A stretch of 64,000 bases of DNA from Zootoca vivipara. Lineage: Eukaryota. The position numbers and the translations under genes are program-made. Under the pieces are notes generated by a model. That model made no database searches. It was not told the origin of the DNA and saw nothing but the letters and a program-made list of their open reading frames with translations. Numbering within the stretch: position 1 is the stretch's first letter; every line of letters begins with the position of its first letter. The stretch spans positions 8,742,001 through 8,806,000 of the forward strand of contig NC_083277.1 in assembly GCF_963506605.1 (NCBI RefSeq), given 5' to 3'. Positions 5,541 to 58,908 of the stretch are shown here, one piece after another.

Positions 5541-7822
5541 CTAGGGTTCCGAATTAGTATGAATTCTTTGGTGTCTACGAAGGTTCGTACTCTTGGTAAA
5601 GAATTTTCCACATTCCATGCATTTGTAGGGCTTCTTTCCTGCATGGCTCTTCTGATGCATGATAAACCGCCATTCATTAGAAAAACATTCCTCACACTCT
5701 CTGCATTTATAGGATAACTCTCCTGTGTGGCTTTTCCGATGTTTCATAAGACTGTCTCTCCTCGAAAAGAATTTCCCACACTCTAAGCATTTGTAGGGCT
5801 TCTCGCCTGTGTGGGTTCTCTGATGAAGCACAAGACGGGATTTCTTAGGAAAACATTTCCCACATTCCAAGCATTTATGACATCTATCTACTGTATGTTT
5901 TTTCTGGTGCCCCTTAAGGGTATGTGAATGAGAAAATATCATTCCACAGTCCAAACATTTATATGGCTTTCTTGGGTGGACTCTCTGATGTCTAATAAGA
6001 TTTGATGAAGCAGAAAAACGTTTCCCACAATCTTCACATTTATAAGGCCCCACTCCTATGTGCACTTTCTGGTGTTCATCAAGGTCTGCTAGGCTGGCAA
6101 AGAGTTTTCTACATTGCACACATTTGTAGGCTTCCGATTTAGTATGGGTTTTCTGGTGACCACGAAGTGTCTTTTTCTTGGGAAAGGATTTTCCACATTC
6201 CATGCATTTGTAGGATTTCTCTCCTGCATGGCTCTTCTGATGGATGTTAAACCGTGATTTGCTAGTAAAACATTCCTCACACTCTGTGCATTTATAGGAT
6301 ATCTCTCCTGTATGGACTCTCTGATGTTTCATAAGACCCTCTTTCCTTGCAAAGCATTTCCCACATTCTAAGCATTTGTAGGGCTTTTCCCCTGTGTGGA
6401 TTCTCTGATGTTTTACAAGACTCTCTCTCCTATAAAAACATTTCCCACATTCCAAGCATTCATGGCATCTATTTACTGTATGTTTTTTCTGGTGCCCCTT
6501 AAGGGTATGTGAATGAGAAAATATCATTCCACAGTCCAAACATTTATATGGCTTTTCTGGGTGGGCTTTCTTATGTCTAGTAAGATGTGATGAAGTAGAA
6601 AAACATTTCCCACAATCTCCACATTCATAAGGCCCCTCTCTTATGTGCACTCTCTGGTGTTCATCAAGGTCTGCTAGGCCGGCAAAGCATTTCCCACATT
6701 CCCCGCATTTGTAGGGTTTCTCTCCTGTGTGGATTCCCTGATGGATTTCAAGTTCTGACGGCAAAACAAACCTTTCCCCACACTCCACACATTTATGGGG
6801 CCTCTCTCCATTGTGAACCGTCTGATGGCTCAAAAGGGCAGATTTATCAGAAAAACATTTCCCACACTCTGTGCATTGATAAGGTTTCTTTCCTGGGTGG
6901 ATTATCTGGTGTTGAACAAGATCTGATTTTGTGGGGAAGCATTTCCCACACTCCAAGCACATATGAGGCTTTTCTCCTGAATGGGTTTGCTGATGAATAA
7001 CAAGTTGTAGCCAACAAGAGAAGCATGACTCACATTCACTGCATTTGTGGGATTGCTCTCCTGTGGGGATTTTCTGGTGTACAAGAAGCTGTGATCTCCA
7101 GAGAAAACGTTTTTGGCACCCAACACATTGGTGGCGTCCTGTGCCTATGTGAATTCTCTGATGTTTCACAAAAGCTGATTGGCTAGGGAAATATTTCCTA
7201 CACTGCAAGCATTTATGTAGTTTCTTTCCACAGTGGCCCTCCCGATGGATCGCAAGGGCAGTGTGCCGAGCAAACGATTTGCCACATTTCATGCACTTAC
7301 AGGGTTTCCCCCCCTTATAGACCTGCTGACGTCTCACCAGTTGCTGCCATCTAGAAAAGCTCGTCTCAGACTGCAAGTACTTGTGCCGTTTTTTTCCTGT
7401 GTGGACTCTCTGGTGTTCACAAAGCTGCGAATTCCGGGGAAAACATTTCCCACACTCCAAGCATTTGTATGGTTTTATTCTTGTGTGGGCTCTGAGATGC
7501 TTCACAAAATCCGAGAGTCGGGAATGTTTCGCTCCACACTCCCAGCAGTCATAGGAGTTGTTTCCTGCATGGAACTTCTGATGGAGCAGAAGGACGGATC
7601 GGCGAGTAAATGTTTTCCCACACTCTGCACACTTATAGGGTTTTTCTCTTTGACAGGTTCTTTGGTGGCTCAAAAGCCCTGAACTCTGATCAAAACAGTC
7701 CCCGCTCTCACTGCCCTTCTGGGGCTTCTCTCCTGTGTGGATTCTCTGGTGTCCGGCAAGAGCCAACGTGAAGGCAAAGCACTCGCCACAGATCGGACAG
7801 GTATATTTTCTCCTGGTGTCAC
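5541..7822 (-). CDS. C2H2 zinc-finger array exon (gene A): ~24 intact + 3 degenerate fingers; upstream exons not identified
   Basis: 741-aa ORF of CxxC-x12-HxxxH repeats with TGEKPY linkers; polypyrimidine acceptor TTCTCTGTCTCTATGCAG|GT GAC ACC (phase 1) at 7822; stop TAG at 5541. Confidence 0.9.
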
Positions 7823-19839: not shown

Positions 19840-20882
19840 TTATCTTTCCGGGGGAAGGTTTTTTGGCCCTGAGCATTTGTGCGGTTTTGATTCCGCATGG
19901 GTTCTCTGGTGTCTTACCAGCTTCTCCTTCTGGAAGAAGCTTTTCCCGCACTCGGAACACGCAAATGCCTTCTCCCCCGTGTGGATCCGCTGGTGCCGGA
20001 TTAACTGGGCACTCTGGCAGAAGCTTTTCCCACACTCGGAGCACCTGTAAGGCTTCTCTCCTGTGTGCATCCACAGGTGAATGTCAAGGTATGACTTCCT
20101 GCTGAAGTTTTTCCCGCACTGAAGGCACTCGTAAGGCTTCTCCCCTGTGTGCATCCTCTGGTGTCTGATCAGCTGTCCTCTCTGGCAGAAGCATTTCCCA
20201 CACTGCAGGCAAGCATAGGGCTTCTCTCCAGTGTGGATTCTCTGGTGTCTGATCAGCTGCCCGCTCTGGCAGAAGCTCTTCCCGCATTGCGGACACTCGT
20301 AAGGCTTCTCCCCGGTATGGATCCTCTGGTGGGTGACGAGCGAGGACTTGTTGCTGAAGCTCTTCGCACAGTGCAGGCACTCATACGGCTTCTCCCCCGT
20401 GTGGATTCTCTGGTGGGTGATAAGATGTGACCGCGTGCTGAAGCTCTTCCCGCACTGTGGGCACTCGTAAGGCCTCTCCCCCAAGTGGATTCTCTGGTGT
20501 GCAAGAAGGTTTTCCCTTTGGCAGAAGCTCTTCCCGCACTCGAGGCACTCGTAGGGCCTCTCGGCCGTGTGGATCATCTGGTGCACGATGAGCCCCGATT
20601 GGTGCTCGAACGCCTGCCCGCATTTGCGGCACATGTGGCACTCCTCTCCTGCGCAGATCGCGCCAGCGTTATCAGATACGGCGGTTTCCACCTCCTGAAT
20701 GGAGATGCCCCACATCTTCATGGCCCGCTGCCACTGCTGCCTGTCGGACTCGTAGCCCTGATCGAAGGCTTCGGACTTCACAGAAACCTCCCTGAGGGAA
20801 CCCCCCGGGAGCCTCCCATCAGAACTGGCTGACCTAGGGCCTTCTTGATGCGTCCTGTCCACCTCACTGGCAGTGCCGTTGC
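19840..20882 (-). CDS. Gene B last exon: linker + 9 C2H2 fingers (SCAN-KRAB-ZNF)
   Basis: Acceptor TAATCTCTTCAG|GC (phase 1); nine intact fingers; a tenth finger is frameshifted ([16 protein letters not shown] lies in another frame). Confidence 0.9.
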
Positions 20883-30123: not shown

Positions 30124-30484
30124 CAGGTGAAACTTGGGAAATTAGAATACCGTCGAATAGTGCATTTATTTCAGTAATGCAACTTAAAAGGTAAACCAAT
30201 ATATGAGATAGATGCATGACATGCAAAGCAAGATATGTCGAGCCTTTATTTGTTGTAATTGTAATTATTTGTCGTTAGGCGGGTCAATTATAAATGGAAT
30301 GCAATTAATGAAATGTAATAGCGATGTTTATTTTTGTTTATTTTTGTAACTATTTGTTTTATTACTGTGGAATTTCCAAAAGAAAGCATTTGTAAAAATT
30401 AAAAGAAAAAGAAAAAATGACAAGTTGCATTGCTGAAATAAAGGCACTTTTCGACGATATTCTAGTTTTCCGAGTTTCACCTGT
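30124..30484. mobile_element. Tc1/mariner MITE
   Basis: TA|CAGGTGAAACT...AGTTTCACCTG|TA; internally deleted relative at ~44140-44335. Confidence 0.8.
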
Positions 30485-30648
30485 AAATGGGCAGCCAGAA
30501 AATGACATGAGTATTGAGTAATGGGATTTGATATTTTGCTTGAATTCTTTAATTTGGGTGTTTGATGGCCTTTTGCATACTGCTTTGCTAAAATAATAAT
30601 AATAATAAAATAATGATAAGTGCCCCTTCGGATATTTGGTGGCCTCAC

Positions 30649-31410
30649 CTTCCGTTCCCATCCCTGAGGCTCATCCTCTTCCTGGCTCAGCAGGAAGTCC
30701 TCTGCCAGGGCCACCGCTTCGGCACAGCTCTCTGCGCCCCCTGCCTTGACCCAGCCCTGCATTTCCTGAGGCAGGACGGCCAAGAACTGCTCCAGGGCCA
30801 CCATCTCAACCACCTGCTCCTTGGTGTGCTTCTCCGGCTTCAGCCACTGACAGCACAGCTCCCGGAGCCGCCTGCAAATCTCTCGGGGTCCCTCCGTCTC
30901 CCGGTAGCAGAAATGTCTGAAGCGTTTACGCTGGATTTCAGCGCTAATGTCACCCGGGACAGTTGCCCTTTCCACCTTGGCGTCTCCCCTCCCTCTGACA
31001 TGCAGGCTCTTTGGGGCTTCGGCGTTGAGATCTGGCGAGATTTGGGTCAACCTCTCCGCTCTAGGACACCGGTCACTTTGGGCTTCCTCTCCGATGGAGA
31101 CCTTATCACCCCATTGAAGCTGCGGATTATCCCATCCTGCTTGGCCCCATAAAAAGTCATGCCACCGGGTTTCCCAGTGTTGGGCCAAACCTTCCTCGGG
31201 TTCCTGTTTAATCTGTAGCAGTGGCGGACCTTTGGAAAAGCTTTGGGCTGCCCCAGCTTGCACAAAATGGCGGCCTTTGTCTCCTTGTTCTTCTCCAATT
31301 GAATCATCTGGTGCTTCTGCCTCTTCCGATTTAATTCCTGCAGGCAACTCGTGAGCGAATAAAGGCTGAAATTGGAAGCCTACAGTTGCCATCCCTGATC
31401 CTCCGGACAT
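30649..31410 (-). CDS. Gene B first coding exon with SCAN domain
   Basis: [64 protein letters not shown]...EAVALAEDF; donor AAG|GTGAGG, phase 0. Confidence 0.92.
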
Positions 31411-50238: not shown

Positions 50239-51290
50239 CTATAAATCACAAACAGCCCCCCAACCTGAGGCAAAATACTACCATTACTATTATGATGATT
50301 TATTAAATTTCTATACAGTACTGCCCTTCATCCAAGGATCGCAGGGCGGTTTATAATATAAAAACACAAAAATGTGTATAATAACAAGCAAAAACAATAT
50401 GCGCTGCAATTGCCCTTGGCAGCACATATTTTATAGGATCAGTTTTTCAGAAAAGGCAACGGGCACAACTTTTTAAAACCACATGCTTAAAGAGTAGCAA
50501 GATGCAGCCTTCCATTCTTGAGAGATCACTAAACAAGTGGCAAGCGGCAGGTAATTAATTAATTAATGCTGTGAATCCTGCATTGCAGGGGGTTGGGCTA
50601 GATGACCCTCAGGGTCCTCCTGCCCAACCCTAACATACTGATTCTAACTGTTAGCAAATAAGATCAGCCTTAGCACCCTCAAAGACAGATAAAAGGCGTA
50701 ACTGAGCATCGAAAGTGACCCGTTTTCCACTAACAAAGTGGTCTCCTTACCCATGGTGAAATACAGTACCACGGTAAAGAGTCTCCGAAGCCAAACGGCT
50801 TGCCTGCCCATAGGATCACAGAATTGTAGAGTCAGAAGGGACACCGAGGGTCATCTAGTCCAACCCGCTGCAGTGCAAGAATCTCAGCTAAAACATATGA
50901 TGACCATAAAGTAAAATAAAATAATAAATAAAAATAATAAATCAGCACTTGATCTTGGCTTTGCCTTAAGGGATCTCTCCCTGCTCCCCGCTCCCTTCTA
51001 CCTTGTTATCATGGATGCTTTAGCTGCAATTCCTGCATTGCAGCGGGTTGGGCTAGATGACCCCCGGGGTCCCTTTCCAACTCCACCATATGATTCCGTG
51101 ACAGGGACCCTGTCTCCTTTTAATCCAGTCAGTCCATTGAGCTTCAATGTTGCCTGCTCGGGCTGGCAGAAGCTTTTCAGGGGGTTTCAGGCAAGTGTCA
51201 CTCCAGACAGGCCAGAGATTTGGACCTTGCACCTTGTGCATGCGGAGCAGCTTCCACGACCCTCCTGCTCCCCCAAGCAAGTGGAGGCTC

Positions 51291-51291
<1 letters not shown>

Positions 51292-51330
<39 letters not shown>

Positions 51331-52618: not shown

Positions 52619-53204
52619 GTGAGTTGAAATAGAATGGAAGTAGAATGAATGAATGAATGAATGAATGAATGGCCAGTAGCCATTGAAAATCCTCCTTCAA
52701 TTTGCCTAACACTTTTAAAGCCAGCCAAGATGGCAGCCCACCCCAACATTTTATGGTAGTAAGATGGGAAGGTGCATCACATGGGAAGGTGCAAGAGAGG
52801 CCGGATTTCCCTTCTCCAGGTAGCACCAGACCCAGCGTGGCTGGGAGGTGGTTGTCACAGACTCCTAACCCCCAACTCTCATGAGTCTCACCCAGCATAG
52901 ACAACGATCAGGTATGATGGGAGTTATAGCTCAGTTGGTAAAGCATAAGCCTCTTAACCTGTGGGTTGTAAATTCAAAACCCCACATTGGAAAAAAGATT
53001 CCTGCATTTCAGGGGGTTAGACTAGATGGCCCTCGTGGTCCCTTCCAACTCTACAATTCTATGACATCTGGAGGGTCATGGGTTTCCATGCCTTTTGTTT
53101 AAAACACACCTGTGTCTTGAATGAGTGAATTTGTGCCCTGTTTTGAAGGTCCTGTTTCTTCCTTGCTCTCTTTAAATGTCACTATCTACATGTATATTTG
53201 CCAG

Positions 53205-54286
53205 CAGATGCCATTTATTTGCCAGCAGATGCCATTTGGGAGAATGAGGAGCAGAAGGAAATAACATCCAGGGTGTCACCAGAGAGGATCATGACCGAGG
53301 AGGTGGAAATGAAGATTGGGAACCCAGATGAACCACATAGACAGGATGAAACCCTACCAGAGGACGGCAGGAAAGAATCCTCTGCTTTTCAAGGTGGAGA
53401 CCTCCCAGATGTTCAGGAGATGATAGACACTGAAGAGGACAGGAATAAATGTATCACATGTGAGAAAGTATTCAGAGATGACTCAAACCTTAAGCGGCAT
53501 CAGAGAACCCACACAGGAGAAAAACCTTATCAGTGTTTGTATTGCGGGAAGAGTTTTAGCCGGAACACGAACCTTGCTTCACATCACAGAACCCACACAG
53601 GGGAGAAACCGTATATGTGTTCCGTTTGTAGCAAGACCTTTTGTGATAAATCGAGCCTTAACCGACATCAGAGAACCCATACAGGGGAGAGACCGTATGA
53701 GTGTGACGAGTGTGGGAAGAGCTTTGATCTGAGTCAGTCTCTCATTAGCCACCAGAGAACCCACACGGGAGAGAGGCCCTATAGGTGCTCGGAATGTGGG
53801 AAGACTTTCAACCGGAGTCAGAACCTCTGTAGCCACAAGAGAATCCACACGGGAGAGAAACAGCACAAGTGCTCGGAATGCGGAAAAAGTTTCAGCCGCA
53901 GCCAGAACCTTACGAGGCATCAGAGCAGCCACACAGAGGATAAACTGTATAAGTGCCATGAGTGTGGGAAAAGCTTCCGTCTCAGCCAGTCCCTTATAAG
54001 TCACCAGAGAATTCACACGGGAGAGAAACCATATACGTGCTCCCAGTGCGGGAAAAGCTTCAACCGAAGGCAGAACCTTATCAGCCATCAGAGAATCCAC
54101 ACTGGAGAAAAACAGTACAAATGTTCGGAATGTGGGAAAAGCTTCAACTGGAGCCAAGATCTCCTCCGTCATCAGAGGATCCACACAGGAGAACAACCCT
54201 ATCGCTGCACGGAATGTGGGGAACGCTTCAATCGGCGAGAAAATCTTATCAGACACATGAGAATACATCTGGGAGACACCACTTAA
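53205..54286 (+). CDS. Gene D ZNF exon: acidic linker + 10 C2H2 fingers, no KRAB/SCAN
   Basis: Acceptor TTTGCCAG|CA GAT (duplicated at 53226); ten intact fingers; stop TAA at 54286. Confidence 0.9.
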
Positions 54287-54758
54287 GTTGTAATGGGGGG
54301 GGAGTGATCAGAAGCCAGTTCCTTATCATTCATTTGACAATCCACTTTTATTTTTAAAAGCATGCCATTAGAGAGATCTTTGGTGCGACCACATTTCGAA
54401 TAGTGTATACAGTTCTAGTTGCCTCACCTCAAAAAGGATATTGTGGAGTTGGGAAAGTTTCCGAAAAGAGCAACCCAAATGATCAAGGGAATGGATTGAC
54501 TTCTCCGCCCTGTGTCAGAATTGGGATTGTAAACTCCTGAAGGACAGAAACCTATCTTCTTAATATTACTTTGTAACAAAACATGCCCAACACCATTTGT
54601 ATTCAAATACTTTAAAAGGTTTACATCCCCTAGAAAAAATATGTTCCATCGTAAGGCAGAATGTAAGTGTGTGACAAAAAGTAGCTTCAAACATGCCTTG
54701 TTTTCCTTGTTGGGTTTTTTTTTGCTTCACTTAATATTTATTAAACTGATATCCCGCC

Positions 54759-56285
54759 TGTGAGGGACAGGGGATATCGCGAAGTCCCTCCCCTCCTGAG
54801 TTCAAGCCCATCCCCGAGCACAGGGGAAAGCAGAGAGAGTTCCGATGCCAGTGGGGAAGCAGGAAGTCGGGTCCGAGGCTCAGGCAAGGTAGAGGAGCCA
54901 GGGTCCCAGGTGGGACAGGAAGGGGCGAATAAGGGGGGGAGACCCATCCCCCCAACTCCGGAATTACGCAGAAAGAGGAGGGGAAAGAGGATGGGTCTGC
55001 CAAAGCTTTTGTGTTGGAGAAAGACGCGCCAAAAGCCATTCGGAGGTTCTGAAACCGACTGACCACATCACTCCGTGTAAATAGCAATGACTTCAGCACT
55101 GTAAATACGCAGCACCAATAAAAGAATAAAATGCAGAGCTGCGTAGCGTCGTTACTCTGAAGTAGCCCACTCCGGCCACTGTGACAGCAACCTCCGAATC
55201 CTTTTTTGGGCTACTTTGGAGTTGCCGGGATGAGCGTGTCAGAGGCGGAGAGATGGCGGCAGATCGCGGAGCAAGCCCAGCAAGAACTGCAGCAGCTGTC
55301 GCTGCAGGCGCAGGGGGAATTGAAGGCAGGGAGCAACTCAATGAGGCCACGGCCATCCTGGACTCAAGGTGGGGGGTGGGGGGCCTGGAGTACCTCATGG
55401 CATGGGAGGACGCCCCGCCATCCCAAAATGAATGGGTCCCAGCCACCCAGATACAAGAGGAATTCTTAGTGGAAGAATTCCACGCCCTCTTCCCACACAG
55501 GCCCAAGCCCTGGCACATGGAAAGGGAGGGGGAGGGGGAGGAAGCACGGGAGAGCAGTTCACCATGGCGCTGGGAAGCGGAGTTTGAGGAACCAGAGGAT
55601 GAGGTATGGGTGTCACCGAGATCCACCCAGTCAGAGGAAGGAGCAGATTGGCAGAACATTTTTACCCCTACCAGCTCTGACGCCACAGACTTTTTGGGAT
55701 TCCCGTCCTCCCAGGCGGAAGGGGGGGGCTCGCAGGACTGGGGGGAGGTGTTCACACCAACGGGCTCGGAAAGCACTGAGTTCTTAGGCTTCCAGTCGTC
55801 ACCGACACCTGGGGGGGACCTGGGGAGGGGTGAAGGAGAGCTTGGGAGGGGGGTGGATGTGAGGGACAGGGGATATCGCGAAGTCCCTCCCCTCCTGAGT
55901 TCAAGCCCATCCCCGAGCACAGGGGAAAGCAGAGAGAGTTCCGATGCCAGTGGGGAAGCAGGAAGTCGGGTCCGAGGCTCAGGCAAGGTAGAGGAGCCAG
56001 GGTCCCAGGTGGGACAGGAAGGGGCGAATAAGGGGGGGAGACCCATCCCCCCAACTCCGGAATTACGCAGAAAGAGGAGGGGAAAGAGGATGGGTCTGCC
56101 AAAGCTTTTGTGTTGGAGAAAGACGCGTCAAAAGCCATTCGGAGGTTCTGAAACCGACTGACCACATCACTCCGTGTAAATAGCAATGACTTCAGCACTG
56201 TAAATACGCAGCACCAATAAAAGAATAAAATGCAGAGCTGCGTAGCGTCGTTACTCTGAAGTAGCCCACTCCGGCCACTGTGACA
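54759..56285 (+). mobile_element. Young non-autonomous Tf1/sushi-type (chromovirus) LTR retrotransposon, 1527 bp
   Basis: LTRs 54759-55186 and 55858-56285 (428 bp, TG...CA, one mismatch seen); TSD CCGCC; PPT GGGAGGGGGGTGGA; PBS complementary to the LTR itself; chromodomain ORF. Confidence 0.93.
55253..56161 (+). CDS. Element ORF (302 aa): integrase-type chromodomain + acidic region with two FLGF motifs + basic patch, reading into the 3' LTR
   Basis: AILDSRWGVGGLEYLMAWEDAPPSQNEWVPATQIQEEFLVEEFHALFPHRPKP is a chromovirus chromodomain; a Gag-like coiled-coil start (MSVSEAERWRQIAEQAQQELQQL, ATG 55230) lies in another frame. Confidence 0.65.
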   Translation: MAADRGASPARTAAAVAAGAGGIEGREQLNEATAILDSRWGVGGLEYLMAWEDAPPSQNEWVPATQIQEEFLVEEFHALFPHRPKPWHMEREGEGEEARESSSPWRWEAEFEEPEDEVWVSPRSTQSEEGADWQNIFTPTSSDATDFLGFPSSQAEGGGSQDWGEVFTPTGSESTEFLGFQSSPTPGGDLGRGEGELGRGVDVRDRGYREVPPLLSSSPSPSTGESRESSDASGEAGSRVRGSGKVEEPGSQVGQEGANKGGRPIPPTPELRRKRRGKRMGLPKLLCWRKTRQKPFGGSETD

Positions 56286-56359
56286 CCGCCTTTATTTCTG
56301 AAGGAGTCTATATGCAATGCATTGCTAGCAACAGGAGATTTACTCAGAAAATTTTACTA

Positions 56360-56655: not shown

Positions 56656-56806
56656 TGTTATCATTACTAAATCCCATGGTGCTTGCTTCTACACCTGTCT
56701 TTGCCAACCTGGTGGCATCCAGATGTTTCAGACTACAACTCCCATCAGCCCCAGGCAGCAGGTGAATTTGCCTGATTTTTGATATGACTTAACTCATAAA
56801 TTGCAC

Positions 56807-56967
56807 NNNNNNNNNNNNNNNNNNNNNNNNNNNNNNNNNNNNNNNNNNNNNNNNNNNNNNNNNNNNNNNNNNNNNNNNNNNNNNNNNNNNNNNNNNNNNN
56901 NNNNNNNNNNNNNNNNNNNNNNNNNNNNNNNNNNNNNNNNNNNNNNNNNNNNNNNNNNNNNNNNNNN
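56807..56967. other. Assembly gap (161 N)
   Basis: Run of N. Confidence 1.
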
Positions 56968-57991
56968 TGCTCACTAGTAATAAATCAACTAAGATTTGTT
57001 TTGCCTTTGGTATAATAACTTAGAAGCTGCATTATTCTGAGTAAAACCTCTGGTCTGTCTAGCTCTGTATTGTTGTCGTTGATTGACAGCGGCTTCTCCA
57101 GGATTTCATAGAATAAAAGAATCGTAGAGTTGGATGAAGGAGATGCCACTCCACCATAATTGATGAGTTAGGGAAACAGGCTGAGAAGCAGTTGCACACA
57201 CATATGTGTAAAACCCATTCATGGCACAAGGATCCTGGGAACTGTAGTTGACTCATTTCCCAGACTACAACTCCCATCACCTCTGGCTGTTGGCCGTGCT
57301 GGTTGGGGAGGTGGAATCCAATACCTGGTGGGGTGGGGCACAGGATCAAATCCCACTCACCCCCGGGCTAAGGGGTTGTTTCATTAAACAACATTGTACA
57401 TTAAAAGCACATGACTTCCCCCTCCGCCCAAATGATCCTGGGAATTGCAGTTCACCCCTCACAGAGCTACAATTCCCAGCCCCCTTAACAGGTAAAAAGG
57501 GTAAAGGTCCCCTCAAAGAATCTGGAAACTCGTTGGTTGTACAGTCATACCTCAAGTTGCGTTCAGGTTACGGTTTCGCCGCATGCGCAAAAGCGCTAAA
57601 TTGCGCACATGCGCAGATGCAGCACTTCAGCTTGCGCCAGTTCCGTGTTACAGACGGTCCTCCGGAACGGATCCCATCCGTAACACGAGGTTCCACTGTA
57701 TGTTGCTTTGGGTTGCCTTGAGCAACATAAATTTAATTAATAATAACAACAGTAACTACAACTGTAGAGAGCCAGTGTGGCATAATGGTTAGAGCGACCA
57801 GGGTTCAAATCCCTACTCGGCCATGAAGCTCACTGGATGACCTTGGGCCAGTCGCTGCCTCTTGGCCTAACCTACTTCACAGGTCTAGTTACAGGTAGGT
57901 AGCCGTGTTGGTCTGGTGTAGTCAAAACAAAAACAAACAAACAAAAAAATTATTCCAGTAGCACCTTAGAGACCAACTAAGTTTGTCATTG

Positions 57992-58029: not shown

Positions 58030-58525
58030 TCTTAATCTCAGGGTCATGAGTTCGAGCCCCGCGTTGGGTGAAAGTTTCCTGCATTGCTGGGGGCTGGACT
58101 AGATGACCTTTGGGCGTACCTTCCAAATTCAATGATCATGGTGGTGGTGGTGATAAGGATGATAAGGAGCCCTCGATCCATGCATGTCTGTCCATGCAGT
58201 CCTAAAGAAGCTAGACTATCCTCCCCAAGGGCCAGAGCCTTTTAAGTGATGGCATTGACCTGGTCTTCAATTTAGCCTGGCCTTCAATTTAGCCTGATCT
58301 GTCATCCCTTTTCCCTTTCCTTTTTTAAGGAAGAAACCCTTCTGGGTCTCCACATAAAAATTTCCCCTGGTCTCCTTGCTGGACTTAGCAGGACTAACTT
58401 GGCCAGTTGCCCTGGTGATGCTATATTGATGTGCATTTTACGATGTTTTAAAGTTGTTTTAGGTTGATGTTTTATAGTTGTTGTTAGCCGCCCTGAGCCC
58501 GGTTCCTAAACCGGGAAGGGATAAA

Positions 58526-58581
<56 letters not shown>

Positions 58582-58583
<2 letters not shown>

Positions 58584-58827
58584 CCCGGGGGCTGTAAGGA
58601 CCCTCCTTGCTTGCAGGGGCTTCCTTTGGGTGCATTGGAGAAGCAGGCTCTGGATCTTGCCTGCTTGAATCCTGCACAGCCTGTGAGTGCTGGGAAGCGG
58701 GGAGGGGGCAGATCTGGGGTGGGTGAGGGGAGAGAAAGGGAGCCTGTCCTGCTGTAAGTGCCTGGAATAAATGGGGGGAGGGGTGCGCTCCCCCCTTGCA
58801 GGAGCCTGCCTTAAATTACATGCAGTG

Positions 58828-58830
<3 letters not shown>
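58582..58830 (-). repeat. Inverted duplicate of 51329-51580 embedded in (AAT)n tracts
   Basis: Direct sequence match; flanked by AAT repeats at 58527-58582 and 58828-58906. Confidence 0.85.

Positions 58831-58908
<78 letters not shown>

What the first reader, a model, noticed from the sequence alone, without database searches (positions are those of the whole stretch)
55343..55792. Retrotransposon chromodomain followed by two tandem LEDGF-IBM/TIM-like FLGF motifs: possible host-mimicking integration-targeting module
Seen: after the chromodomain (55343-55513) the ORF carries WQNIFTPTSSDATDFLGF (55649-55702) and WGEVFTPTGSESTEFLGF (55739-55792), and later a basic RRKRRGKR patch. Established (recalled, not looked up): proteins that bind TFIIS N-terminal/LEDGF integrase-binding domains (JPO2/CDCA7L, IWS1, MLL1, POGZ) use a short helix, often ending in IF, an acidic Ser/Thr-rich phospho-linker and FxGF. 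Both repeats here fit that architecture. Inference: this chromovirus lineage may tether its integrase to LEDGF/HRP2 or other TND elongation factors by motif mimicry, in addition to the chromodomain. I am not aware of this being described for sushi-type elements. The chromodomain appears to lack the first and third aromatic cage residues, which would make a second targeting device plausible.
Basis: partly seen in the sequence, partly recalled or inferred. Interest (0 to 1): 0.9.

Follow-up and report, generated by a model that had tools for sequence, protein, structure and literature searches.

The report
Lizard retrotransposon tail mimics LEDGF-binding motif
A young, internally deleted lizard LTR retrotransposon keeps the end of its integrase gene, where a chromodomain with a broken methyl-lysine cage is followed by two conserved copies of a short motif shaped like the host peptides that dock onto LEDGF/HRP2; this suggests, without any binding test, a new way of aiming integration.

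Summary
Window 54759-56285 is a 1.5-kb LTR element with 428-bp LTRs that differ at one base, TG..CA ends and a CCGCC target duplication. Its 671-bp interior keeps only a probable gag start and the pol 3' end. That end has a chromodomain, then two motif copies, W-x-x-[IV]-F-TPT-(S/T/D/E)-FLGF, and the reading frame continues about 300 nt into the 3' LTR. This copy has no integrase.

In full-length lacertid relatives (Podarcis), the motif lies in frame after RT, RNase H, integrase and the chromodomain. It marks a single deep clade with integrase identity of about 50% between subclades. The spacing between the hydrophobic-F anchor and FxGF is always 8-9 residues. The G and final F are invariant, and the rest of the tail does not align. 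Within the window, 11 of 18 residues are identical between the two copies, yet 9 of those 11 use different codons (pS 0.83, pN 0.25). That points to selection on the protein.

Every clade member has a degenerate aromatic cage. Canonical-cage chromoviruses, including others from Podarcis, lack the motif.

All sequence features of a LEDGF/HRP2-type TND-interacting motif are present. No publication describing this was found.

The parts
54754..54758 (+). 5' target-site duplication CCGCC
   Evidence: The same 5 bp occur at 56286-56290, directly flanking the LTRs.
54759..55186 (+). 5' LTR, 428 bp, TG...CA ends; AATAAA at 55117 and 55125
   Evidence: The 5' LTR, taken as 54760-55187, matches 55859-56285 over 427 bp with one mismatch.
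55189..55199 (+). Primer-binding-site-like 11-mer AACCTCCGAAT, complementary to LTR 55038-55048; suggests Tf1/sushi-type self-priming
   Evidence: This is the longest complement between the LTR and the first 40 nt after it. Self-priming itself is an inference.
55230..55300 (+). Probable gag start (MSVSEAERWRQIAEQAQQEL...), in a different frame from the chromodomain ORF; the internal deletion joint lies near 55300
   Evidence: There is a weak resemblance in style to the gag start of Podarcis P0192. Homology to pol resumes at about GGIEGREQLNEAT. This reading is an inference.
55346..55522 (+). Chromodomain with a degenerate aromatic cage (N / W / A)
   Evidence: Pfam Chromo E 7e-7; AlphaFold2 pLDDT about 95 with strand-strand-strand-helix; cage table.
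55568..55615 (+). Possible decayed extra motif copy, RWEAEFEEPEDEVWVS, with FxGF replaced by VWVS
   Evidence: Read from the sequence; it occupies roughly the place of the relatives' first motif. Inference.
55649..55702 (+). TIM-like motif 1: WQNIF-TPTSSDATD-FLGF
   Evidence: In the 17-sequence alignment, G123 is invariant and F124, F111 and T114 are conserved in at least 90% of sequences. AlphaFold2 shows a helical turn at W107-N109, at low confidence.
55739..55792 (+). TIM-like motif 2: WGEVF-TPTGSESTE-FLGF
   Evidence: Against motif 1, 11 of 18 residues are identical and 9 of those 11 use different codons; pS 0.83, pN 0.25.
55844..55853 (+). Polypurine tract GGGAGGGGGG, 4 nt upstream of the 3' LTR
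   Evidence: Sequence; assigned by position.
55858..56285 (+). 3' LTR. Its first ~300 nt continue the pol reading frame to the TGA at 56159-56161. It encodes a Ser/Gly/Glu-rich stretch, the basic patch RRKRRGKR (56066-56089) and LLCW (56105-56116).
   Evidence: The same basic patch plus LLCWKR ending occurs in P0001, P0005, P0136 and P0165.
56286..56290 (+). 3' target-site duplication CCGCC

Best explanation
Window 54759-56285 is a recently inserted, internally deleted copy of a chromovirus (Ty3/gypsy LTR retrotransposon). The family belongs to a clade found so far only in lacertid lizards. In autonomous members, the Pol polyprotein ends with integrase, then a chromodomain, then a disordered tail. 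The chromodomain still folds but has lost its methyl-lysine aromatic cage. The tail carries one or two copies of a short linear motif: W-x-x-[ILVM]-F, then an 8-9 residue Ser/Thr/Asp/Glu linker, then F-x-G-F. I propose that this motif imitates the host TND-interacting motifs that dock onto the integrase-binding domain (a TFIIS-N-terminal-type domain) of the H3K36me3 readers LEDGF/PSIP1 and HRP2/HDGFL2. IWS1, JPO2 and MLL1 carry motifs of this type. On this model, the hydrophobic-F anchor enters pocket 1, the acidic or phosphorylated linker lies on the basic patch, and FxGF enters pocket 2. The intasome would then be tethered to transcribed chromatin rather than to H3K9me heterochromatin. Two tandem copies would add avidity, for example on a LEDGF dimer or a multimeric integrase. 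Shown here: the anatomy, the in-frame position after integrase in relatives, the conservation and codon-level selection, and the co-occurrence with a degenerate cage. Inferred: the binding partner and the effect on targeting. The copy in this window has no integrase and its gag ATG is in another frame, so it merely preserves the motif.
For: Anatomy: LTRs, target duplication, polypurine tract and deletion. Chromodomain. In frame with RT, RNase H and integrase in 1191-1498 aa Podarcis Pol proteins. The motif regex hits 17 of 247 fetched proteins, against 0.13 expected by shuffling. Every hit lies just after the chromodomain of this clade, and there is none in the roughly 110 other long chromoviral Pol proteins fetched with the integrase query, or in the other chromodomain proteins fetched, from fungi, algae, amphibians, fish or other Podarcis families. 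The motif bearers form one clade (SH-aLRT 100) with two subclades more than 1 substitution per site apart. In alignment A2, the columns conserved in at least 90% of sequences lie only in the chromodomain and the motif (F111, T114, G123, F124). The anchor-to-FxGF spacing is always 8-9 residues. Between the window's two copies pS is 0.83 and pN is 0.25. The tail is disordered, with a helical turn at the W-x-x of motif 1. The cage is degenerate in all clade members and intact in all non-members examined. The TIM definition (helix, acidic or phosphorylatable linker of 8-16 aa, FxGF) and the statement that FxGF is required by all known LEDGF/HRP2 partners come from PMC9987994. The FxGF-LEDGF-domain docking is conserved as far as Drosophila (PMC6877644). 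Precedents for integrase C-terminal tethering peptides: Ty5 TD5-Sir4 (phospho-dependent), MLV-BET and HIV-LEDGF (PMC7459421).
Against: No binding test of any kind was possible, because no LEDGF, HRP2 or other TND sequence could be obtained under its rules. In the window's lineage the linker has only 2 acidic residues, and in the P0130 subclade it has none (TPTLSAST); binding there would depend on phosphorylation, and not at clean CK2 sites. In the first motif of the P0136, P0137 and P0165 group, the first F of FxGF is L or M. Sequence searches of the motif against PDB chains found only chance matches. My comparison with the IWS1 TIM3 sequence rests on memory; the primary papers were not held. 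The single insertion seen here says nothing statistically about targeting.
Confidence: 0.5

Rival explanations
1. The motif is a real, selected docking peptide, but for a different host partner. Candidates are another TND (TFIIS, ELOA, PNUTS, MED26, IWS1), the PP2A-B56 pocket (LxxIxE followed by acidic residues, as used by delta-retroviral integrase), or histones directly (acidic-aromatic chaperone-like motifs).
For: The evidence for conservation and selection is the same as above. Some copies read LQEIFEE or LQEVFET, which fit LxxIxE. Delta-retroviral integrase binds B56 through a short motif (abstract listed). Acidic stretches ending in aromatic residues are typical histone binders (my recollection).
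Against: The LxxIxE pattern holds in only 2-4 of about 14 motif instances, and fails in the window and in the whole P0130 subclade. The best-conserved element is FxGF at a fixed distance. The review names FxGF as the specificity element for LEDGF/HRP2 and as optional or absent for other TNDs. Neither B56 nor histone binding explains an invariant G.
Confidence: 0.3
2. The motif serves the element internally rather than tethering it to a host factor. It might fold back on the cage-less chromodomain or on integrase (auto-regulation or multimerisation), or act in Pol processing or nuclear import.
For: It always lies next to the chromodomain and co-occurs with the loss of the cage. Tandem copies could match integrase multimers.
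Against: The AlphaFold2 model of the chromodomain plus tail shows no docking of the tail: tail pLDDT is about 50 and pTM is 0.42. The distance from chromodomain to motif varies from 7 to about 50 residues. The motif architecture matches a known trans-acting host motif class in detail.
Confidence: 0.12
3. There is no protein function. The post-chromodomain reading frame is fortuitous, or conserved for a nucleic-acid role near the polypurine tract, and the FxGF resemblance is chance.
For: The tail is low-complexity and GC-rich. A long shadow ORF runs on the opposite strand (55093-56046). This copy cannot express the tail from its gag ATG.
Against: Synonymous sites between the two copies are saturated while 11 of 18 residues are kept. 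The motif persists across subclades whose integrases are only about 50% identical, while the flanking tail is unalignable. Chance expectation is 0.13 against 17 observed.
Confidence: 0.04

Closest known systems
Host TND-interacting motifs / LEDGF integrase-binding-domain binding motifs (IWS1 TIM3, JPO2, MLL1, POGZ, MED1, ASK; Drosophila JIL-1)
   Same: A disordered peptide with a short hydrophobic helix anchor ending in F, a Ser/Thr/Asp/Glu linker, then FxGF, often in tandem within one protein (PMC9987994; PMC6877644). The more acidic relatives, for example IFEETDSEEEEFIGF in P0109, closely resemble what I recall of IWS1 TIM3. That recollection was not verified.
   Different: The motif is encoded by a retrotransposon Pol tail, not a host transcription factor. 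The linker is fixed at 8-9 residues. The window's lineage and the P0130 subclade have replaced most acidic residues with Ser/Thr and a TP dipeptide. Binding is untested.
HIV-1 / lentiviral integrase-LEDGF/p75 tethering
   Same: The proposed outcome is the same: an integrase tethered through the LEDGF IBD to H3K36me3-marked transcribed chromatin.
   Different: My recollection is that lentiviral integrase binds the IBD through its folded catalytic-core dimer interface rather than through an FxGF peptide. The mechanism proposed here would instead be true mimicry of the cellular ligands.
Ty5 integrase targeting domain (TD5)-Sir4, and the MLV integrase C-terminal tail-BET ET domain
   Same: A short peptide at the integrase C-terminus acts as a portable tether to a host chromatin protein. 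Ty5 TD5 requires phosphorylation (PMC7459421).
   Different: The partners and chromatin states differ: Sir4 heterochromatin for Ty5 and BET at promoters for MLV. Neither involves a TND.
Chromoviral group II chromodomains and the CRM-clade CR motif of plants
   Same: The first and third cage aromatics are lost, which defines group II. In CRM elements the Pol C-terminus reads into the 3' LTR (PMC3605345).
   Different: As of 2013, group II chromodomains were reported only from plants, whereas this is a vertebrate clade. One subclade has also lost the central W. The plant elements are not reported to carry an FxGF motif.

Membership tests
TND-interacting motif (TIM) / LEDGF-HRP2 IBD-binding motif | FxGF element, required by all known LEDGF/HRP2 partners | tested here: met
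   FLGF occurs twice in the window. F/L/M-x-G-F is present in every clade member. G is invariant and the last F is conserved in at least 90% of sequences. Definition.
TND-interacting motif (TIM) / LEDGF-HRP2 IBD-binding motif | Flexible acidic and/or phosphorylatable linker (8-16 aa, rich in D/E/G/S/T) between helix and FxGF | tested here: met
   The linker is 8-9 aa in all instances, with at least 5 D/E/S/T residues. Caveat: the window's copies have only 2 acidic residues each, and the P0130 subclade has none.
TND-interacting motif (TIM) / LEDGF-HRP2 IBD-binding motif | Obligate short alpha-helix presenting F/V/L/I side chains to pocket 1 | tested here: inconclusive
   W-x-x-[ILVM]-F is conserved. 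AlphaFold2 gives a 3-residue helical turn at W107-N109 of motif 1 only, at pLDDT about 55.
TND-interacting motif (TIM) / LEDGF-HRP2 IBD-binding motif | Lies in an intrinsically disordered region | tested here: met
   Tail pLDDT is 47-57 with no regular structure.
TND-interacting motif (TIM) / LEDGF-HRP2 IBD-binding motif | Direct, FxGF-dependent binding to a TND/IBD | not testable with these tools
Chromovirus (Ty3/gypsy LTR retrotransposon with a chromodomain at the integrase C-terminus) | LTRs with TG..CA ends, target-site duplication and polypurine tract | tested here: met
Chromovirus (Ty3/gypsy LTR retrotransposon with a chromodomain at the integrase C-terminus) | Chromodomain fused to the integrase C-terminus in Pol | tested here: met
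   Met in relatives: P0130, P0004, P0136 and others carry RT, RNase H, rve, the SH3-like Tf2-1 domain and the chromodomain in one protein. In the window copy the integrase has been deleted.
Group I (HP1-like) chromodomain | Aromatic cage Y/F-W-Y | tested here: not met
   The window has N-W-A. Clade members have N/H/Y at position 1, W/K/R at position 2 and A/E/T/F at position 3. Non-members have Y/F-W-Y. The clade therefore resembles group II as defined.
Tf1/sushi group (self-priming chromoviruses) | Sequence just after the 5' LTR complementary to the 5' end of the transcript, rather than to a tRNA | tested here: inconclusive
   An 11-nt complement links 55189-55199 and LTR 55038-55048. The transcription start is unknown. 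In the integrase tree the clade is not nested among the fish and amphibian elements.

The most novel reading that the evidence does not exclude
A lizard chromovirus clade gave up methyl-lysine reading by its chromodomain. It evolved, in one to three tandem copies, a faithful imitation of the cellular FxGF-type TND-interacting motif, and so hijacks the H3K36me3 readers LEDGF/HRP2. This would be a second, independent invention of LEDGF-directed integration, outside retroviruses and through ligand mimicry rather than the lentiviral core-domain interface.
Probability: 0.45. Interest if true: 0.85.

Novelty: new variant of a known kind. Interest (0 to 1): 0.72.

Why it matters
Integration-site choice is known mechanistically for only a handful of retroelements (Ty1, Ty3, Ty5, Tf1, MLV, HIV), and for no vertebrate LTR retrotransposon. 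If this tail binds LEDGF/HRP2, it would show convergent capture of the same host tether by a retrotransposon and by lentiviruses. It would also provide a natural, minimal, portable LEDGF-docking peptide, and it would explain how a chromovirus can dispense with its aromatic cage. The prediction is sharp and cheap to test, using peptides with F-to-A mutants and the insertion profiles of young copies. A negative result would still leave a strongly selected, unexplained motif at the business end of an integrase.

Tried and rejected
- **PDB sequence searches:** phmmer of the two-motif segment found no hits. A two-copy motif profile found only chance matches, RexA and an FN3 protein, at E 0.4-0.8. 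HMMER does not see motif-level similarity of this kind.
- **ESM Atlas:** a feature search of the motif region gave no usable hit.
- **The search for homologous proteins:** the window ORF as query returned nothing at E <= 0.001 within its length window.
- **Complex prediction:** not run. It needs a TND/IBD chain, and none could be obtained within the rules.
- **Primary papers:** Tesina 2015, Sharma 2018 and Cermakova 2021 were not held. A search for the IWS1 peptide string found nothing.
- **Alternative motif readings rejected from the sequences:**
  - LC3-interacting region (D-W-x-x-[IV]): fits the window's two copies but not relatives such as P0109, P0007 or the first motifs, and it ignores FxGF.
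  - PIP-box, AP2 WxxF and HP1 PxVxL: the patterns do not fit.
  - PP2A-B56 LxxIxE: fits only 2-4 of about 14 instances.
- **Other copies in the window:** none of the LTR or the interior were found.

Full report
**What is in the sequence**

The region lies in an ORF at 55181-56161.

Repeat finding and alignment show two 428-bp direct repeats, 54759-55186 and 55858-56285. They differ at one base, begin with TG and end with CA, and are flanked by CCGCC on both sides. A purine run, GGGAGGGGGG, sits just before the second repeat.

This is therefore an LTR retrotransposon of only 1.5 kb with a 671-bp interior. The near-identical LTRs indicate a recent insertion.

The interior starts with an 11-mer complementary to LTR positions 55038-55048, which resembles Tf1/sushi-type self-priming. 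A probable gag start follows at 55230, in a different frame. From about 55300 the sequence is homologous to the extreme 3' end of relatives' pol.

**The chromodomain**

Pfam Chromo matches at E 7e-7. AlphaFold2, given a 17-sequence alignment, folds residues 6-64 of the 55331-55858 translation as three strands and a helix at pLDDT about 95. Everything after that is disordered, at pLDDT about 50.

I aligned the domain on the ILDSR and YL.xW anchors. Canonical chromoviruses in the fetched set have the cage Y/F-W-Y. That set includes other Podarcis families, amphibian and fish elements, and metagenomic elements. The window has N-W-A.

All its close relatives have a non-aromatic residue at one or more cage positions. 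One subclade has even replaced the central W with K or R. This matches the 'group II' definition, loss of the first and third aromatics, which a 2013 paper reported only from plants (PMC3605345).

**The motifs**

The two copies, 55649-55702 and 55739-55792, are paralogues with 14 of 24 aligned residues identical.

Over the 18-codon core, 11 residues are identical and 9 of those 11 use different codons. The proportion of synonymous differences is 0.83, which is saturated; the non-synonymous proportion is 0.25. The duplication is therefore old, and W, F, T, P, T, S, T, F, L, G and F have been held by selection on the protein, not on the DNA.

A possible third, decayed copy lies at 55568-55615 (RWEAEFEEPEDEVWVS).

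**Relatives**

A full HMMER scan of 1.84 billion representative proteins, using the chromodomain plus tail as query, gave 120 hits. The best are from lacertid lizards: Podarcis muralis, P. lilfordi and Zootoca vivipara. Some are unnamed Logan or ENA contigs.

Further searches seeded with the Podarcis proteins retrieved full Pol proteins of 1191-1498 aa. These carry RT, RNase H, the integrase zinc finger, rve and the SH3-like Tf2-1 domain.

In all of them the chromodomain is followed by the same device, 7-50 residues downstream. Examples:

| Protein | Motif sequence |
|---|---|
| P0130 | DWLFTPTLSASTFQGF |
| P0001 | WEEQFATTDEEEEDFVGF and WEAVFESTDDDSSSFRGF |
| P0005 | WKTVFESDENEDTDFLGF |
| P0007 | LQEVFETTEDGEEFEGF |
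| P0109 | LQEIFEETDSEEEEFIGF |
| P0136 | YFATTDEEEELEGF and WREMFETSEDEEDSFRGF |

I wrote a regex for the architecture: a hydrophobic residue plus F, then 7-10 residues of which at least 5 are D/E/S/T, then [FLM]xGF. It hits 17 of 247 fetched proteins, always in this position and only in this group. None of the other chromoviral Pol proteins fetched is hit, and 0.13 hits are expected from shuffling.

The anchor-to-FxGF spacing is always 8 or 9 residues.

In the 17-sequence alignment, columns conserved in at least 90% of sequences occur only in the chromodomain and at F111, T114, G123 and F124 of the motif.

An integrase tree puts all motif bearers in one clade (SH-aLRT 100). The clade has two subclades more than one substitution per site apart. 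Its sister is an element from the amphisbaenian Rhineura floridana, which is truncated before the tail.

**Comparison with the known motif class**

The review of the TFIIS N-terminal domain family defines a TND-interacting motif by three parts (PMC9987994):

- an obligate short helix that presents F/V/L/I to pocket 1;
- an 8-16 residue linker rich in D, E, G, S and T, whose phosphorylation (by CK2, for example) raises affinity;
- an FxGF that fills pocket 2.

FxGF is present in every known partner of LEDGF and HRP2 and essential for their binding. The same review notes that proteins often carry two or three such motifs. FxGF-LEDGF-domain docking is conserved as far as Drosophila JIL-1 and JASPer (PMC6877644).

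All the sequence-level features are present here. The helix is only weakly indicated, by a 3-residue turn at low confidence.

The acidic variants look very like what I remember of IWS1 TIM3. I could not verify that sequence, because the primary papers are not held.

The window's lineage differs from the textbook motif. Its linker is mostly Ser/Thr with a TP dipeptide and only two acidic residues. The P0130 subclade has no acidic residue in the linker at all.

**Mechanism proposed**

In autonomous members of the clade, the integrase tail docks onto the IBD/TND of LEDGF/PSIP1 or HRP2/HDGFL2 and tethers the intasome to H3K36me3-marked, transcribed chromatin. This substitutes for the lost H3K9me-reading cage.

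Integrase C-terminal peptides that tether to host chromatin proteins are established for Ty5 (a phospho-dependent hexapeptide binding Sir4) and MLV (BET). LEDGF tethering is established for HIV (PMC7459421).

I found no paper describing an FxGF or TIM motif in any transposon.

The binding step is inference. I could not run a complex prediction, because no TND sequence could be obtained under its rules.

**Rivals**

- **Another partner.** PP2A-B56 LxxIxE fits only a few copies. Histone binding or other TNDs do not explain the invariant FxGF at a fixed spacing.
- **An intramolecular role.** The model shows no docking, and the chromodomain-to-motif distance varies.
- **No function.** This is contradicted.

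**Context and limits**

The element lies 472 bp downstream of the stop codon of a C2H2 zinc-finger exon (53198-54286), in the same orientation. The window is a SCAN/C2H2 ZNF cluster. One insertion is an anecdote, not targeting evidence.

There is therefore no DNA of relatives, and no read or expression data.

Other first-reader notes from the same genome report the same two-motif tail on integrase-bearing copies elsewhere. They suggest the family is multi-copy there. They are unchecked, come from the same kind of reader, and are not independent support.

**Verdict**

The sequence-level predictions of the interpretation are confirmed. The function is plausible and specific but untested. If it holds, this is a new variant of a known principle, integrase tethering by a short C-terminal peptide, with a new partner class for retrotransposons.

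Noticed in passing
window 55858-56161 (3' LTR); equivalent stretch 54759-55062 in the 5' LTR: The pol reading frame runs about 300 nt into the 3' LTR, so almost all of U3 is coding. The last ~35 residues are a basic patch plus LLCW[RK][KR] and an acidic Ser-rich end. They are conserved at the protein level in P0001, P0005, P0136 and P0165, and as R-rich plus ILSWC in P0130 and P0131. This may be a second selected motif, perhaps a nuclear localisation signal or a nucleosome- or DNA-binding element. A pol ORF reading into the LTR is known from plant CRM elements.
   Followed up: partly
window 55189-55199 and 55038-55048 (also 56137-56147): An 11-nt perfect complementarity links the sequence 2 nt after the 5' LTR with an LTR-internal site just upstream of the pol stop. 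No tRNA-type TGG primer-binding site is present. This suggests Tf1/sushi-like self-priming, with transcription starting near 55038.
   Followed up: partly
window 55568-55615: RWEAEFEEPEDEVWVS looks like a decayed copy of the motif. The anchor and acidic linker are kept, but FxGF is replaced by VWVS. It lies roughly where relatives carry their first motif.
   Followed up: no
window 5541-7766(-), 19840-20862(-), 30328-31410(-), 42711-44063(-), 53198-54286(+): The window is a cluster of C2H2 zinc-finger exons plus a SCAN-domain exon. The retrotransposon sits 472 bp 3' of one zinc-finger exon, in the same orientation, possibly in its 3' UTR.
   Followed up: partly
window 50568-50617, 51023-51072, 52992-53041, 58069-58118; (ATT)n runs near 51300 and 58520-58900: Several copies of a short interspersed repeat share the core GGGTTGGACTAGATGACC. 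Long ATT/AAT microsatellites are also present. This is ordinary squamate repeat content.
   Followed up: no
window about 56789-56974: A run of N, which shows as X in the ORF listing.
   Followed up: no
P0025 and P0030 (Podarcis muralis): A different Podarcis chromovirus family has an intact Y-W-Y cage and an acidic Ser-rich tail (WESDSESEPEES) but no FxGF. It would be a useful within-genome contrast for insertion-site comparisons.
   Followed up: no
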